A stretch of 64,000 bases of DNA, taken from assembly GCA_001179505.1 (NCBI GenBank), contig CDMY01000200.1, positions 105,801 through 169,800 of the forward strand. Reading direction: 5' to 3'. Shown one piece after another: positions 55,930 to 64,000 of this stretch (position 1 is its first letter; each line of letters opens with the position of its first letter). Position numbers and translations under genes: made by a program. Source of the DNA: Vitrella brassicaformis CCMP3155 (Eukaryota > Protista > Chromerida). The notes beneath the pieces were generated by a model that was not told where the DNA came from, did not search any database, and saw nothing but the letters and a program-made list of their open reading frames with translations.

Positions 55930-56562
55930 GCGGTTGCTTGCGCGTGTCGATGAGTGGTCTGCACCTGTTCTATAGCATCTTTTTCGATGACCGCTCATCG
56001 GCATTTGGTCTCGTGTGTGCGTGGCTGCTTGGATGAGTGGCCTGTACCTGTTCTTTGGCGTCTTTTTCTATGGCCGCTCGTCGGCACTTGGTCTTGTGTG
56101 TGCGTGGCTGTTGGATGAGTGGTCTGCACCTGTTGTCTGGCGTCATTTTTCGATAACCATTCATCGGCATTTGTTCGTGTGTGCGTGGCTGCTTGGATGA
56201 GTGGTCTGCACTTGTTATCTGGCGTCTTTTTTAATGATCGCTCGTCGGCATTTGGTCTTGTGTGTGCGTGGCTGTTGGATGAGTGGTCTGCACCTTTTGT
56301 CTGGCGTCTTTTTCGATAACCGTTCATCGGCATTTGTTCGTGTGTGCGTGGCTGCTTGGATGAGTGGCCTGCACCTGTTCTCTGGCGTCTTTTTCTATGA
56401 CCGCTCGTCGGCATTTGGTCTTGTGTGTGCGTGGCTGTTGGATGAGTGGTCTGCAGCTGTTGTCTGGCGTCTTTTTCGATAACCGTTCATCGGCATTTGT
56501 TCGTGTGTGCGTGGCTGCTTGGATGAGTGGCCTGCACCTATTCTCTGGCGTCTTTTTCGATC
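55930..56562. repeat. Minisatellite with alternating A (83 bp) and B (80-81 bp) monomers
   Basis: Units start at 56013(A), 56096(B), 56177(A), 56260(B), 56340(A), 56423(B) and 56503(A, partial), with a degenerate unit from ~55930. All begin GTGTGTGCGTGGCTG(C)TTGGATGAGTGG. Confidence 0.95.
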
Positions 56563-57069: not shown

Positions 57070-58030
57070 TCATTCAAGTAATTTGCGATAGACAATATTG
57101 CGACAGATCGGCGGGCCGTCACAGATACGCTCAGGCGACGTGAGCAAGAGCATATCGCACCCGTAACGCACACGAGTGAGGGCCGTGTAGAGGTGGCCAT
57201 GCTGGAAGAAGTGGTGACGAATCTCGATCACGATCTTTTCCAGTGTTTGTCCTTGACTCTTGTGGACCGTCTCAGCGTATGCCGGCTTGACCTGCACACA
57301 TTAAGAGACGCGTATGCAGCTTGCGTGTCTGTCTGTCTGTCTCTCTGTCTCTCTCTCTCTCTCTCTGTCTGTGTGTGTCTATGCATGTCTAACCGGATAT
57401 TGACAGCGGTTAAACTTCAGGCCACGCACGTTGCGTGGCTGGATAGTGAAGTTGATGCGTGGTAGCACGAATGTCTGCCATGGTGAGGCGCCCCCATTCA
57501 CCTTCTTGACCTCGATCATCCCCTCGCCGCGGGGCCCTTTATAGATCACCTTCTCGTTGTTGTACAACTCGTAGCGGCGTGACATGTTCCGCAGCACCAG
57601 ACATACCACGCCCGGCTTGAGCTGCAGCTTGTGTGGGGGCTTTGGCGACTCTTCTTGTGCGGCAAGGAACTCCTCGTCGTGGTGACCGGCCTGCTGGTCG
57701 TTCTGCAGGAATCTCTCAAAGGCCGTGTGGGTGTACTCCTTGCCGTTCATGCGTTGAATGATGGTGTCATTCAGCGCGTCCACCGCCTTGTTGACTGGAC
57801 AGAGGATGGCGCGTGTGGCACACGCTTCTGGGTCGCGGTTGTAGAGCTCGTCGGGGAAAGCGAATTCGATGGCGTCTTGCTCGCTGAAGGTGTGTTGGTG
57901 GTTGAGCTTGATCCAATGGGTCTCGTCACCGCGGCGAAGAGAAGGGTCGCTCTGAGGGTCGATGCAAAAAGTGGGCACCTCGCAAGGCACATCCACAGAC
58001 TGGTATGTGAGCATACGCAGCGAACACACA

Positions 58031-58062
<32 letters not shown>

Positions 58063-61000
58063 AGAGCGACACCACACACACAGACAGGAGCTGGTCCACA
58101 GGGGTTCTACTGCCACCTCTACTCATTTGTCTTAGCTCTTGTTGTCGCTGTGCTTGTTGCACGCATCGAGACGCCTGTCTTTTGGGCTCGACGCGTCGCA
58201 ACATTTGTGCGTAGGGGCAGTGAACACTCGAACCACTGAGACACTCACTGCACAGGGCACTCACCCTCTCTTGGCAGTGAACGTACCTTCAAACACATGT
58301 CTGTATAGGCAGCATCGTTTGCTGAACGCTGCACGCGCTTGAGCTCTCGCCGATTGAGTTGACCGTAGAGGTCCGAGCCGCGAAGGGAGGCCTTCAGTGT
58401 TGTTGTTTCATTCGATTCCTCGCTGCGTGGAAGGACGGGGGGCAGCTGGCGAAAGTCACCCGCAAAGATGAAGACCTTGCCGCCGAAGGGCAGCTTGCTT
58501 TTCATGACGTCTTGCAGCATGAGGTCAACAGCTTCAATACACTTGCGGTGCGCCATGCTGAACCAAAGACGCACGTTGCAGTCTATGTGTGTGTGTGTCT
58601 CTGTGTGTATGGCACCTGATCTCATCCCACACGATGACCTTCGCTTTTCGCAGCAGGTCCGCTTTGGGCGAGTTAACGCTCATGGTGCATCGAACCTCCT
58701 CGCGAGTGATGTTATCGACGACGGGGATCTTGTGGAGGCCGTGTGCAGTGTGGCCGCCGATATAGTTGAGTGCAGCGAGTGCTGTTGTTGCGGTTGCCAG
58801 AGCGATGTCGCCGCGGCTGCGCACCGCAGAGAGCACGCATCGCAGTAGCGTGGTCTTGCCAGCACCACCTAAACGATACGCATGCGGACTTGTGTCATTT
58901 GTTCACACCAGTGGTTGTGTGAGTCGATGTGTACCGGGAGCTTTGATGAGACCCGCGAACGGAACAGGGTCGCCACCCCCTCTCGGATAGATGTGCTGCA
59001 TGATGTCGTCAAACAGGTCGCTCTGCTCCCTGACGTTCTTGACCATGTTGTACAGCTCCTCGTAGTAGCGCTTGATGGCAGTTCGACTGCCGTAGGCTCT
59101 GCGCTCGCTCTGCTCCTCGGCAGTGAGGTTCTCGGGCTCTGGCAGACCACAGTCGGTGTTCGACTTGCCGTTCTCCTGCAGGTCCTCAGAAATCTCCCGC
59201 AATAGACGCTCGCGCGCTGCCTCAGGATCGTCGACTTCCTCGTAGTCGTCCACCATGAATGGCAGGTACTGATTGAAGATGCTCTTCGCTGAGCACTCGT
59301 GGTTGAGGATCAGGATCATGAACAGAAACCGCAGCTGGTATGGAAAGACGGCCTGCTCCTCCACAGCCTCTCGCATCACGTTCTCCACATATGTGTGTCC
59401 CTCCAGCAGCCCCGCCGCCTTTGCTGCCTCGCCGTACGTGTCGTATGTGACGTCGTTGATCGTTCGAATGCTCTGCAACCAAGCAAAACAATGCTCATGT
59501 GTCATGTACTGGTGTCCGAGCTTGAGTGTGTGTATGCGTGTCTCACCTCAAATGTGTGTCGCGCGACGGAGCTCTTCAGCAGCAATCGCAGGTAGTACCT
59601 CTCGCCCTGGCTCGGATAGGAGCTGCCCAGCCGCGTGCAGTGGCGCTGCCATCCCTCTCGCTGGTAGAAGGTGTGGCCCGTCAGCGTTTGGAACTTCTCC
59701 AGCTTCGCAGGGACTGTTTGGGTGCCGCGCTTCATGGCGAAGCGCTGGAAGAACTGCTGGTAGGTCAGCTTAGTGAGGTCCATCTCTTCACCCTTGATAG
59801 AAACCGAGGACGGTCGCTGCAGCCAGTGCTCGATGAGGCTGGGGCCGGGAGGGAAGATCTTGCCCCGCTCGTCCTTGCCGTGCACTCTCTGCACTGCTGC
59901 CCGATGAGATGGAAGGTCGACAGTAGGGCTGTCACGGACGGCTCGGCTCGGTCCAGTGGATTTGATGGCCGCAGATGCGGTGGCACGCCTCGCTTGCACA
60001 CAGCACCCGGCCCTGCTGGTAGTCACGCACCTCGTCTCGTCCTGGTTGCTTGGTGGGCTCTTGAGTGTGGGTGCTTGTGAGAAGGCTCGCCATGCGTCTT
60101 GCGGTATGCCGCTGTCGCTGTCGCTTCGCTGAAGGTTGCTCGTCGTCGGGTGGCGAGTCGCCGTCGTCCGCTCCCCGCTTGCGCTTCCTGTCGGCTTCTT
60201 GATGCACACTGACGCGAAAGGCGCTCTTCTCGGGCTTGTACATGTACTTGTATCTGCGGCGCAGCGAGGAGCCAAACACAACCACATTTGTGCGTGGGCG
60301 ATTTCTTGCTGCTTCATCCATTTTCCTTTTGGCTGCTTACAGGTAAGCGATGACGTTGGTCGATGCAGCACAGTCCACATAGAGGTGACAATTGAACTCT
60401 GCCAGCAGCTGCGGGCAGTAGGGTGCCACCCAACGGTCTTCCTCTTGTCTGCGGCGATAGATGCAGTGGCCGCGGGCGTCGAACTGCGTCTCGGCGCTGA
60501 GCGGCTGTGGGAACCCATACTTGCAACGCTCCACAACGGGCTCGTGAGCCCTCAAGCAGCGGTGATACTCCTTCAGGCTGTCCTCGTCTCGGCACCGAGC
60601 GCTGCACTTGTGGATCATGAACGTCTCCACGAGCTTGCGGAGCCGTCGATTGTGTCTGGGGACCTCCGCACACACGAACAGGTCGACGTCTGGTCCGGTC
60701 AGTGGGTGACGATCATGGCGAACGGTGATGTGGGCGTGGCTAAGACCGCGCTTCTGGTACTCGATGACGGACATCAGGTACACCGACTTGCCCAATGGGC
60801 CATTGCGTAGGCGTTTGAGCAGGGCACGTAGCTTCAGATGGAACACACGGCTGGTCAGGTCAGGGCGGTCGTACGCGTTCTGCCCTGCAAACACGAGCGA
60901 AAGCACAGCCACCCAGAACGCACAACGACATGCTAGACTGCTGTGCTGCTCGGCTCGTTGACTGTGTTTCTCACCTTGCTCCAGATTTTCATGAATTTCT

Positions 61001-62476
61001 TTCCAGCTTCCATTGCAGGTAATTGTGATGAACCATGAGGGCTTGCCATACTGCGCCACGATAGCAAACGCGTCTTGACACAGCTTTTTGTAGTAGCGCT
61101 CTGACCCGAGGAAACTGCTTGGAAGCAGAACAAAGCCAGCCTTGGCGTGATCCTCCATGTCCTCATTCTCCGCGAGAAGCTGCTGGTACTCGGGGTCTTC
61201 CTCTCGCTGTAGCTCACTCAGCTTAAGCAGGCGAAGCTGGTTGTTGCGGATGAAGTTGAGTCGCTCGTCTTCGATACGCGAGAACATATCGAGCGTGTAC
61301 CCCTGCCCAAGCCGAGGCATGGTGTGCAGCAGCGGCTCCTTGAGTAGCCGCTGGCGCATGTACTTTAGCTGTGTCCAGAATCGCTCGCAACGTCTCGCGG
61401 TGCCCTCTAAGACGTCTGGCTCGTGCCACGCGCGAGTGTAGAACCGCCGATCGATCATGTTCTTGATGTAAGTGCTCTCAGCAAACAGATGGAAGTTGCC
61501 CCTGCCACACACACAACAACACACATACATGCAGCGCCACTTACAGCGAATGCCCTGTCAGCGACACGCACCTGGATTCGATGGGCATGGACGGATACCA
61601 GCCAGGCGTCCCTTGAGCAAAGAGCAGGGGATACTGCAACGGCTCGTAGACCGGCGATAGCACGTCCACGAACTCTGTCGACTCGCCTCTACGTGTCGAC
61701 TTCTTGAGCGAGATGCACACCTTGCGCTGCTGTGGAAGATAGGCGGAGCTCGAACACGGCAGGACCAAGCACACGTCGTCGGCCTCTTCTTTGAACTTGA
61801 ACTCGAGAATTATGTCCTTTCTCCCGTGTTCGACCAGCCGCCCGAAGGCGCGCAAGTCACGGACGAAGGGGTTGTTTTCGCGAAGGATTTCCTGACCAAC
61901 AAATAGATACAGCCATGAATGCCGCAGTTCCTTATGCTATTCGGTGTGTCGTTTGCTTACTTTCAGCTCTGTAACGAGGTACTCGTAAGCTTGCCGTTCC
62001 CTGTCGTGCGCTGCTGCGCTGCCCGTCTCCTTGCACATCTGGTCGACGCGCTTTTTGAGCTCCGTCTCAGCTGCCTTGTTGTCAAACATCAGCCACACAA
62101 TCGGGTTGTCCTCTGCAGAGATGATGCGATGGTACACACGACCATGAATCCTCACGTTGCCCCAGTCTTGTGGAAGGGATGCGGCGAGGTCTGAACTGGT
62201 ATCGTAGCCGATAGCTGTCATGGCAAAGGTGTTGTTGAGATAAAGCGACTTTGCACGCAGCTCCTTGCCGTAGCGTGACGCAAGCAGGCTACGCAGCTCA
62301 TCAGGCACGGAAAGGTTGTCCAGCACTGTCTTGCCCTGCTGGCAGCAAAACGATCCACCTTCGCCCTCCCACACGAGAGCGTCGCAGTAGTCACAGGCGG
62401 TGCGCTTCGGCAACACGTGCTCGTCAGGCAGTTCGACGGTCGGGTCCAGCAAGGGTTGGTCACACGCACCGCTCTC
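57070..62476 (-). pseudogene. Helitron Rep/Helicase coding region, intron-rich, with a net +1 frameshift at ~59930-59950
   Basis: Exons splice in phase except at IHWTEPSRP* (TGA 59932-59934). The downstream frame (…TVDLPSHRAAVQRVHG…GERYYLRLLL) is offset, and a GAGCC duplication is visible there. Confidence 0.85.
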
Positions 62477-62590
62477 TGTACACAGTAAGCGTCACCCTTG
62501 TCTCTCTTCGCTCTCTCTTCGCTCTCCTGTGTCTGTCTGCATGTGTCGTGTCTCTCTCAGGTCACCTGGAAAATGAAGACACAGTAGCTC

Positions 62591-63876
62591 TCAAAACCGT
62601 CCTGCTCGCTGGAACGCCGCCTTCACCTCCTTGCGCGTCGCTCGCTCGATGCGGAAGCCCTCCATGACTGGTCTGCCCGTTGCCTCTTTGGGTCGCACGT
62701 GCACCTCGAAGCAGCCCCGCCCCGCGCCGTTGAAGTTCACTCTCATCCAGCAGAGCTTCCGATTCACGCCCTGTGACCGCTCGTGCTCTCGCAGCAGCTC
62801 GTGCGCGAAGCGACTGACGCCATTGCGCGTGAGCAGCGGCTCTCGTGTTGTCTCGTCCTCGCCGCTTGCCTGCTCCGTCTTGGCAGGCTGTTTGTCCTCC
62901 TCCGTCACCACGAAACACTCCAGCTCAGCGTCAGCTTCGCAGCGCTCTCGGATTCTCTCAAAGGCACTCGTGATATCGTCCTGCGTGAGTTTGCGTGGCT
63001 TGCTGCAGCGCGTCTGCCTCCTCCCCTCAAACTTCGCTCGGAATAGTGCAGACTCCCAGCTCCACCGAATGCGGGGAGGCGGGTCGATTCGACACACGTG
63101 GCCATATGCATCAATCAGCGAATTTGCATGCGCTTTCGCCTCTGCGAAAAGCAAACAGACAGATCATTTGCAATTCGCCCAACGCAACACAGAGACATAC
63201 ATACATACGTACCTTCCTCACTCAGATAACAGACCCTTTTTGTTTCGGGCTCTGCATCATTCTCGAAACACGCTCGGAGAGGTCGGGACACAGTGAGCGG
63301 TGCGAAGCGTCCAGTGGATCTTCCTCGCTTTTTCCCTTTCCGTGCTCCCTTTCTCGCGCCCACATCAGGATCCCCACTGCCGTGCTCTTCCGTCTGAGCT
63401 TGTGTCTTTTCTCCATTCCCTGTCGGTTCACCCATCGTCGCATCGTGTGGTGCTCCTGCCGATAGCACTGTGTCCCTCACGTCAGCGACGATAGCACTCA
63501 GCCGCACCACCACCCGCCGCTCGACGTCCTGCCGCCCACCCAGCCACCCCCACACCTCGCCAGGCACAGTGAGGTGTCGAATCTCCCCGACAGACATCAG
63601 CAGCAGCGCCTCTCTCAGCCAGTCCGACAGCGTGTCATCATTGACTGCACACGTCACGTCACCATAGCCTGTCGTGTGGCCGTGGTTGGTGCTAAGGTCG
63701 TCCCAGAAAGTGACCGAGAACGTGACCCGAGCGTCAGCGGTGGGGCGACGGCCGTCCCCATCACACACAATCTGGTGGCGCACAGCAAGTGGGGTCACCA
63801 CTATCGCTTGTCTGAGGGATGCCTGCCCCTCAGAGACACGCCGTCGCCGGCGAGCCGGCTCTCCACTGCGGTCCCG

Positions 63877-63913
<37 letters not shown>

Positions 63914-63994
63914 GCGCACACCAGACAACAACGCACATGAGATGCATGCAGTCATTCCCCTCCGCAAGCCCTCTCACCTGCTGTTGCACGACAT
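62591..63994 (-). CDS. FKBP-like domain + two AP2-like domains; probable N-terminal part of the Helitron RepHel protein
   Basis: ATG 63994 micro-exon joins in phase 2 to the exon with RHQIVCDGDGRRPT…VTFSVTFWDD…LREALLLMSVGEIRHLTVP. This joins in phase 1 to ORF 62591..63154. TGA 62591-62593 is followed by an in-phase GT donor leading to RepHel. Confidence 0.6.
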
Positions 63995-64000
63995 GCTAGT

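What the first reader, a model, noticed from the sequence alone, without database searches (positions are those of the whole stretch)
62594..63073. Two AP2-like DNA-binding domains upstream of, and probably fused to, the Helitron Rep
Seen: two segments with the same three-strand-plus-helix pattern, RIRWSWESALFRAKFEGRRQTRCSKPRKLTQDDITSAFERIRE (~63073-62942) and RVNFNGAGRGCFEVHVRPKEATGRPVMEGFRIERATRKEVKAAFQRAGRF (~62749-62594). By eye they resemble alveolate AP2 domains (V-x-W/F…W/F-x-A/V…F-x-P-x-x-x-T-x-E-E-V/I-x-x-A). Established: ApiAP2 proteins are the main apicomplexan/chromerid transcription factors, and AP2 domains are proposed to derive from mobile elements (HNH endonucleases, integrases). 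Inference: a rolling-circle transposon carrying AP2 domains would be a candidate vehicle for ApiAP2 spread, or a case of capture for target-site choice. I know of no described Helitron with this architecture.
Basis: inference. Interest (0 to 1): 0.85.

Follow-up and report, generated by a model that had tools for sequence, protein, structure and literature searches.

The report
Orphan N-terminal modules of a Helitron
The two "AP2-like" segments are real, conserved protein modules at the front of a rolling-circle transposon (Helitron) gene in the alga Vitrella brassicaformis, but no test identifies them as AP2 DNA-binding domains, and in this copy a stop codon separates them from the transposase.

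Summary
They lie in one exon (63141-62566) of a spliced transcript that continues into a Helitron RepHel gene of Vitrella brassicaformis.

**Real domains.** A second, diverged Helitron copy on another contig (L001) carries the same region. Amino-acid identity there is 39-40%, against 70-78% for the zinc-finger-like and Rep parts. dN/dS is about 0.3 for each unit and 0.9 for the acidic linker between them.

**Fusion.** The exon is in the same frame as the zinc-finger-like/Rep exons. In this copy an in-frame TGA (62593-62591), also present in the RNA contig, ends the frame 25 nt before the splice donor. The sibling has a frameshift in the same ~50 nt. Both copies carry further defects, so fusion is the likely ancestral state but is not intact here.

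**AP2 not supported.**
- No PF00847 hit on either unit of either copy; PDB-sequence, PHROGs and NCBIfam searches were also blank.
- Among 1.84 billion proteins, only the two Vitrella loci are true relatives.
- Two low-confidence AlphaFold models (pLDDT 48 and 53) both give helix-strand-strand-(strand)-helix twice.
- Structural neighbours are weak: dsRBD and HPF-type sandwiches. None is an AP2.

The scan had one earlier first-reader note on this same stretch (s1-215924), and none on other DNA.

The parts
63978..63994 (-). Putative first mini-exon with the start codon (ATG 63994-63992). This is an inference.
   Evidence: The sequence reads ATGTCGTGCAACAGCAG|GTGAGA. The phase (2 bases) fits the acceptor at 63878/63877. 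It is not covered by laid contigs, because that region was skipped as repeat.
63878..63977 (-). Putative intron holding a (TG)n microsatellite. This is an inference.
   Evidence: GT..AG ends and a consistent phase. The annotated protein P0001 starts right after this acceptor.
63213..63877 (-). Exon with a weak FKBP-like region followed by a basic, NLS-like stretch. It is spliced in frame to the exon of the finding.
   Evidence: RNA-type contig junction 63213|63141 and frame continuity. FKBP_C scores E=0.008, 16.9 bits, below the 21.1 cut-off. The Atlas lead to FKBP_C scores 0.86.
63142..63212 (-). Intron of 71 nt (GT..AG). Its position is conserved in the sibling copy.
   Evidence: Junction in an X4 contig, splice sites, and the sibling ORF reading through the equivalent intron.
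62930..63139 (-). Predicted as helix, two strands, a possible third strand, then helix.
   Evidence: AlphaFold secondary structure in both copies. Identity to the sibling is 38% and dN/dS is 0.30.
62837..62929 (-). Acidic linker, predicted disordered.
   Evidence: pLDDT below 50 and dN/dS 0.88.
62594..62836 (-). Predicted as helix, three strands, then helix.
   Evidence: AlphaFold block-mean pLDDT of about 50-72 and about 49-66. Identity to the sibling is 47% and dN/dS is 0.32.
62591..62593 (-). In-frame TGA that ends the N-terminal frame, 25 nt before the exon's donor site.
   Evidence: It is present in the spliced contig with no differing letters. It aligns to GGA in the sibling.
62566..62590 (-). 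Tail of the exon after the TGA. It is in the same frame and homologous to coding sequence in the sibling (LHFPE versus RHYPE).
62476..62565 (-). Intron of 90 nt (GT..AG).
   Evidence: Junction in an X4 contig and splice sites.
61961..62475 (-). Exon with a zinc-finger-like motif (CxxC ... CCxxGK) in the stretch upstream of the Rep domain.
   Evidence: Identity to the sibling is 70% and dN/dS is 0.08. This stretch is included in a query region that aligns with Helitron proteins of fungi, plants and insects at 24-30% identity over most of its length.
60341..61891 (-). Three exons encoding the Rep (HUH) domain. The introns lie at about 61502-61571 and 60885-60974.
   Evidence: Helitron_like_N at E=2.1e-42, junctions, and 78% identity to the sibling.
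59920..59960 (-). Frameshift in this copy, apparently a 5-nt tandem duplication of CGAGC relative to the sibling.
57070..59472 (-). PIF1-type helicase exons running to the stop codon at about 57070.
   Evidence: PIF1 at E=1.3e-16 and Pif1_2B, junctions, and translation.

Best explanation
The finding is the second coding exon (63141-62566, minus strand) of a transcribed, spliced and slightly decayed Helitron RepHel gene of Vitrella brassicaformis. The exon encodes two lineage-specific alpha/beta modules of about 70-80 residues, separated by an acidic disordered linker. Each module is predicted as helix-strand-strand-strand-helix.

In the ancestral element these modules were most likely part of one polyprotein, in this order:
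1. A variable N-terminal domain (FKBP-like here, OTU-like in the sibling).
2. A basic, NLS-like stretch.
3. Module 1, linker, module 2.
4. The zinc-finger-like motif.
5. The Rep HUH nuclease.
6. The PIF1-type helicase.

My inference is that the modules act as accessory nucleic-acid-binding or protein-docking modules that help the transposase find its ends or targets. They are not demonstrably AP2 domains. This copy is broken by a TGA between module 2 and the zinc-finger-like exon and by a frameshift further downstream. Its main transcript can therefore only give a protein of about 410 residues without Rep.
For: - **Splicing.** Spliced contigs from two runs give eight GT..AG junctions. These keep one frame from the FKBP-like exon through Rep, apart from one TGA.
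- **Sibling.** A sibling copy on another contig has the same order of parts, with protein homology starting at the same exon boundary.
- **Selection.** dN/dS is 0.30 and 0.32 for the modules, 0.88 for the linker, and 0.08 for the zinc-finger-like and Rep parts.
- **Coding after the stop.** The stretch after the TGA is homologous to coding sequence in the sibling, and the TGA aligns to GGA.
- **Helitron identity.** Helitron_like_N scores 2.1e-42 and PIF1 scores 1.3e-16. Relatives are Helitrons of fungi, plants and insects.
- **Fold.** Both AlphaFold runs give the same order of secondary-structure elements for both modules.
- **Accessory domains are expected.** RepHel proteins are said to often carry them (PMC10288648).
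Against: - Only two copies are known, and both are defective, so no intact fusion protein has been seen.
- The main RNA isoform retains the TGA.
- A binding function is pure inference.
- The runs with spliced contigs are not labelled as RNA in the record.
Confidence: 0.6

Rival explanations
1. One reading: the two segments are AP2-type (three strands plus a helix) sequence-specific DNA-binding domains, related to ApiAP2 or to integrase and HNH-associated AP2 domains, fused to the Helitron transposase.
For: - The predicted strand-strand-(strand)-helix order is compatible with AP2.
- Conserved aromatic residues sit on the predicted strands.
- The host lineage is rich in ApiAP2 genes, including one cluster of 50 homologous genes in Vitrella (PMC4501334).
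Against: - No PF00847 hit was reported on four unit sequences or on the whole exon (listing threshold E<=10; the filters drop most matches above about 0.1).
- No PDB sequence hit at E<=10, and nothing relevant in PHROGs or NCBIfam.
- Precomputed Pfam domains for the annotated protein list only Helitron families.
- No AP2/ERF or integrase arm-binding domain appears among the listed top 50 rows of five searches of solved structures.
- A conserved N-terminal helix is part of each unit, and AP2 has none.
- The basic residues on the strands of unit 1 are not conserved in the sibling.
Confidence: 0.08
2. The modules are a tandem pair of dsRBD-like (alpha-beta-beta-beta-alpha) domains. They would bind structured nucleic acid such as the Helitron 3' hairpin, RNA:DNA hybrids or double-stranded RNA, and might even counter RNA silencing.
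For: - Both models give alpha-beta-beta-(beta)-alpha twice, with a linker between.
- By my own count of the listed rows, proteins containing dsRBDs make up about 17 of 50 rows for this copy and about 32 of 50 for the sibling. Many are tandem-dsRBD proteins aligned over about 175-190 columns.
- By eye, unit 2 has ATRKEVKAAF / ATRRAVKAA at the start of its last helix. From my own knowledge this resembles the dsRBD KKxAK motif.
- The best VIA matches (HPF/YfiA) have, from my own knowledge, a related two-layer alpha+beta topology.
Against: - All Foldseek E-values are >=0.07.
- No dsrm Pfam hit.
- The models are low-confidence, and the motif match is by eye only.
Confidence: 0.2
3. The stop is not decay. 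The element normally makes a short N-terminal protein (about 410 residues, ending at the TGA). It makes the RepHel fusion only when an upstream alternative donor (GAG|GTGAAG, last exon base 62627) is joined to an acceptor 2 nt further on (first exon base 62473).
For: - That donor/acceptor pair is canonical and in frame, and it is what the public annotation used for P0001.
- The same donor (GCG|GTGAAA) and acceptor exist in the sibling and would also restore its frame.
- Both copies have their disruption inside the ~50 nt that this splice would remove. I estimate such a coincidence at a few percent if defects fall at random.
Against: - No contig shows this junction; the only junction seen is 62566|62475.
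- Conservation of the donor is explained by the conserved Val-Lys codons.
- Both copies have other inactivating defects.
- The TGA aligns to a sense codon in the sibling.
Confidence: 0.15
4. The ORF is chance or non-coding sequence, or a host exon unrelated to the Helitron.
For: - There are no homologues outside two Vitrella loci.
- The Atlas recognition score is low, at 1569.
Against: - The region is conserved at a second locus with different flanking genes.
- dN/dS is about 0.3, and second codon positions are more conserved than third positions.
- The exon is spliced in frame on both sides.
Confidence: 0.03

Closest known systems
Helitron RepHel transposases with N-terminal accessory regions (for example Helraiser, and OTU-bearing Helitrons)
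   Same: - The order zinc-finger-like motif, Rep HUH nuclease, then PIF1-type helicase is the same.
- The region from the zinc-finger-like exon into Rep aligns with Helitron proteins of fungi, plants and insects at 24-30% identity over most of its length.
- One such relative carries an OTU domain (P0008).
- Accessory domains are said to be common in RepHel proteins (PMC10288648).
   Different: - The two modules ahead of the zinc-finger-like motif have true relatives only in the two Vitrella loci, among 1.84 billion proteins.
- The gene has at least eight introns.
- The most N-terminal domain differs between the two copies: FKBP-like here, OTU-like in the sibling.
AP2/ERF and ApiAP2 DNA-binding domains (PF00847)
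   Same: They are small, about 60-residue units with beta strands followed by a helix. They are abundant in the host lineage (PMC4501334).
   Different: - No HMM match.
- No structural match among the listed rows.
- Each unit has an extra, conserved N-terminal helix.
Tandem double-stranded-RNA-binding domains (dsRBD, PF00035), as in DGCR8, TRBP, DRB4 and NF90
   Same: The predicted alpha-beta-beta-beta-alpha order occurs twice with a flexible linker. These proteins dominate the weak Foldseek lists.
   Different: - No sequence match.
- E-values are >=0.07.
- I know of no link between dsRBDs and rolling-circle transposases.

Membership tests
AP2/ERF - ApiAP2 (PF00847) | A significant match to the AP2 profile. 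Woo et al. defined chromerid ApiAP2 with an AP2-derived HMM at E<1e-3 (PMC4501334). | tested here: not met
   No PF00847 hit was reported at a listing threshold of E<=10 for either unit of either copy, or at E<=1 for the whole 187-aa ORF. HMMER filters drop most hits above about 0.1.
AP2/ERF - ApiAP2 (PF00847) | A three-stranded antiparallel sheet packed on one C-terminal helix, structurally matching solved AP2 domains. | tested here: inconclusive
   A strand-strand-(strand)-helix order is predicted, but with an added conserved N-terminal helix. No AP2 entry appears in the listed rows of five PDB searches. The models have pLDDT 48-53.
AP2/ERF - ApiAP2 (PF00847) | Conserved Arg and Trp DNA-contact residues on the sheet. 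| tested here: inconclusive
   W26, W28 and F33 of unit 1 and W30 of unit 2 are conserved. The Arg and Lys residues of unit 1's strands are not. Only two sequences are available.
AP2/ERF - ApiAP2 (PF00847) | Sequence-specific binding to double-stranded DNA. | not testable with these tools
   This needs EMSA or a protein-binding microarray.
Helitron RepHel | A Rep (HUH, Y2) nuclease domain. | tested here: met
   Helitron_like_N at E=2.1e-42, and REP_ORF2-G2P at 5.6e-4.
Helitron RepHel | A C-terminal SF1B PIF1-type helicase on the same gene. | tested here: met
   PIF1 at E=1.3e-16 and Pif1_2B at 5.3e-4. The exons are colinear and joined by spliced contigs.
Helitron RepHel | Element termini (5' TC, 3' hairpin plus CTRR) and insertion at AT. 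| tested here: inconclusive
   No conserved terminal sequence was found between the two copies past the helicase. The 5' end lies at or beyond the window edge.
dsRBD (PF00035) | A significant profile match. | tested here: not met
   No dsrm-type hit.
dsRBD (PF00035) | An alpha-beta-beta-beta-alpha fold matching solved dsRBDs. | tested here: inconclusive
FKBP_C (PF00254), upstream exon | A profile match above the gathering score. | tested here: not met
   16.9 bits against a cut-off of 21.1, E=0.008. The Atlas lead scores 0.86.

The most novel reading that the evidence does not exclude
A chromerid Helitron family carries a pair of previously unseen nucleic-acid-binding modules, possibly dsRBD-like, ahead of its transposase. 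It uses alternative 5' splice-site choice to make either the N-terminal protein alone or the full RepHel fusion. The N-terminal protein could bind the element's hairpin or double-stranded RNA, for example to aid end recognition or to blunt RNA silencing.
Probability: 0.1. Interest if true: 0.6.

Novelty: new variant of a known kind. Interest (0 to 1): 0.3.

Why it matters
If the AP2 reading had held, it would have linked a mobile element to the spread of the main apicomplexan family of transcription factors. The evidence does not support that link.

What remains is more modest. A Helitron family in a close relative of apicomplexans has a modular N-terminus:
- An enzyme-like domain that differs between copies.
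- Two orphan modules that have been kept under selection.

The gene is transcribed and correctly spliced although broken. This gives a concrete pair of domains to test for end or target recognition in rolling-circle transposition. It also shows that the public gene model (P0001) avoids a real stop codon by using a splice site that the assembled transcripts do not show.

Tried and rejected
**Sequence searches that found no family for the units**
- Pfam at a listing threshold of E<=10 on each unit and on the sibling: no AP2, no dsrm, only chance rows.
- PHROGs and NCBIfam: nothing relevant.
- PDB sequence profile search at E<=10: zero hits.
- Word-indexed protein search with the 187-aa ORF: none.
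- The same search with P0001 residues 120-330: only P0001 itself.
- Exhaustive phmmer search: only P0001, P0002 and a spurious repetitive bacterial protein.
- ESM Atlas, by features: no usable hit for the ORF.

**Structure-based searches that found nothing informative**
- ESM Atlas, by shape: nothing informative.
- BFVD viral fold search: nothing informative.

**Other checks**
- Internal duplication of the two units: not significant.
- Other copies within the window: none.
- Conserved 3' terminus between the two copies: not found.
- Literature on Helitrons with AP2 domains, or on Helitrons in Vitrella: nothing relevant.
- OTU in the sibling's N-terminus: no Pfam hit, only an Atlas lead.
- I first read "ttttccag" at 62566 as a splice acceptor. 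The contigs showed it is the end of the exon, followed by a GT donor.
- I did not type an AP2 or dsRBD sequence from memory for a direct alignment. That profile-to-profile test is still undone.

Full report
**Observation**

Downstream on the same strand lie a Helitron Rep (Helitron_like_N, E=2.1e-42) and PIF1-type helicase pieces (E=1.3e-16). The organism is Vitrella brassicaformis CCMP3155. The annotated protein of this locus, P0001, carries that name, and earlier scan notes say the same.

**Gene structure**

I laid the contigs of four public runs on 58001-64000. Two runs (X4 and X6) hold contigs that skip eight short segments, all with GT..AG ends on the minus strand. Run X1 holds the unspliced form. 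X4 and X6 therefore behave as RNA assemblies, although their records do not say so.

The junctions place the finding in one exon, 63141-62566. It is flanked by:
- a 71-nt intron (63212-63142), and
- a 90-nt intron (62565-62476).

Joining the exons keeps a single reading frame through four parts: an upstream exon (63877-63213), this exon, a zinc-finger-like exon (CxxC...CCxxGK) and the three Rep exons. The one exception is an in-frame TGA at 62593-62591, 25 nt before the exon's donor site. The spliced contig shows no differing letters, so the stop is in the RNA too.

The public model P0001 avoids the stop by using an upstream donor (last exon base 62627) and an acceptor 2 nt further on (first exon base 62473). 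No contig shows that junction.

A second defect, a frameshift near 59940, looks like a 5-nt duplication relative to the sibling. A likely start codon (63994) and a first intron containing (TG)n are inferred from phase and splice signals only.

**Relatives**

An exhaustive phmmer search of 1.84 billion representative proteins with the 187-aa ORF found only three hits:
- P0001, which is this locus;
- P0002, at 40% identity;
- a spurious repetitive protein.

P0002 lies on another Vitrella contig (L001) among TLD-domain genes and directly upstream of a RepHel gene. tblastn shows that the two loci are colinear from the first residue of this exon through Rep.

| Region | Amino-acid identity | NG86 dN/dS |
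|---|---|---|
| Unit 1 | 38% | 0.30 |
| Acidic linker | about 32% | 0.88 |
| Unit 2 | 47% | 0.32 |
| Zinc-finger-like exon | 70% | 0.08 |
| Rep exon | 78% | 0.08 |

dS is saturated, so these ratios are rough. Even so, the units are real coding modules that travel with this Helitron lineage, and they evolve faster than the catalytic core. The intron at the exon's 5' edge is at the same position in the sibling.

**Is it fused to Rep?**

After the TGA, this copy reads ELLCLHFPE and then, after the splice, SGACDQ. The sibling reads LGELVKRHYPE followed by SAACDQ, with GGA where this copy has TGA. However, the sibling has a 2-nt length difference just upstream, which puts its unit 2 in another frame.

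Both copies are therefore interrupted within the same ~50 nt. Both also have other defects:
- the sibling has a stop inside a Rep exon;
- this copy has the frameshift near 59940.

The simplest reading is an ancestral single polyprotein that has since decayed independently in each copy.

A less likely reading is that this ~50-nt segment is optional. An alternative donor that is conserved in both copies would remove it and restore the frame in both. I could not test this with raw reads.

**Is it AP2?**

- No PF00847 hit was reported on each unit of each copy at a listing threshold of E<=10 (filters drop most matches above about 0.1), or at E<=1 for the whole ORF.
- A profile search of PDB sequences gave nothing.
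- PHROGs and NCBIfam gave nothing relevant.
- The two units are not significantly similar to each other.

AlphaFold on the two-sequence alignment gave low confidence: mean pLDDT 48.2 for this copy and 52.7 for the sibling. Both runs gave the same order of elements for both units: a long helix, two to three strands, then a helix. The leading helices contain some of the best-conserved residues (ANxLIxAY and ELLREH..QG). AP2 domains have no such helix.

Fold searches gave no significant match:
- Foldseek's weak lists are dominated by dsRBD proteins. The best E-values are 0.067 and 0.082, and by my count about 17 and 32 of the 50 listed rows contain dsRBDs.
- No AP2/ERF or integrase arm-binding domain was listed anywhere.

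I therefore treat AP2 as untested-negative by sequence and unsupported by structure, but not excluded. I treat the dsRBD-like topology as a lead only.

**Neighbouring parts**

- The upstream exon of this copy has a sub-threshold FKBP_C match (E=0.008) and an Atlas lead to FKBP (0.86).
- The sibling instead has an upstream region with OTU-like motifs by eye, no Pfam hit and an Atlas lead to OTU (0.90).
- Both copies then have a basic stretch and a short shared motif (K..YL..EE) before the modules.
- Distant relatives of the zinc-finger-like/Rep region are ordinary Helitrons of fungi, plants and insects, and one of them carries an OTU domain.

**Verdict**

The sequence observation holds, and the link to the Helitron gene is real. 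The AP2 assignment and the ApiAP2-spread idea are not supported.

The best description is a pair of orphan alpha/beta accessory modules in the N-terminal part of a Vitrella Helitron protein. They are conserved under moderate constraint, and a nucleic-acid-binding or docking role is plausible but unproven. In this copy a stop codon cuts them off from Rep.

Noticed in passing
window 62473-62627 (minus strand): The public gene model P0001 skips the in-frame TGA by joining donor 62627 to acceptor 62473. The assembled transcripts instead show 62566|62475, which keeps the stop. The annotation is therefore probably wrong for the main isoform.
   Followed up: partly
window 59920-59960 (minus strand): An apparent 5-nt tandem duplication (CGAGC) relative to the sibling shifts the RepHel frame between Rep and the helicase. 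This is a second inactivating defect in a gene that is still transcribed and spliced.
   Followed up: partly
L001 9440-10252 (+): The sibling Helitron has an OTU-protease-like region (by eye DNHCFFHCLAQQL ... NHHFDYV) ahead of the modules, where this copy has an FKBP-like region. There is no Pfam hit, and the Atlas lead to OTU scores 0.90.
   Followed up: partly
window 63214-63873 (minus strand): An FKBP-like exon is spliced in frame to the modules. Pfam FKBP_C scores E=0.008, below its cut-off, and the Atlas lead scores 0.86.
   Followed up: partly
window 55949-56561: A tandem array of an 82-bp unit (7.5 copies, 84% matches) lies about 0.5 kb past the helicase stop codon. It may be a satellite associated with the Helitron's 3' side.
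   Followed up: no
window 61508-61546: A 39-nt TG-rich piece inside the intron at 61502-61571 also occurs in another contig with unrelated flanks in all four runs. It is a short dispersed repeat.
   Followed up: no
window 63878-63994 (minus strand): A probable start codon (63994) and a 100-nt first intron filled with a (TG)n microsatellite. Both are inferred from GT..AG ends and phase only, because the read tool skipped this repeat.
   Followed up: partly
L001 12050-12100 (+): The sibling copy has an in-frame stop inside a Rep exon (KR*DRYW). This is why its annotation is split into two genes, P0002 and P0010.
   Followed up: partly
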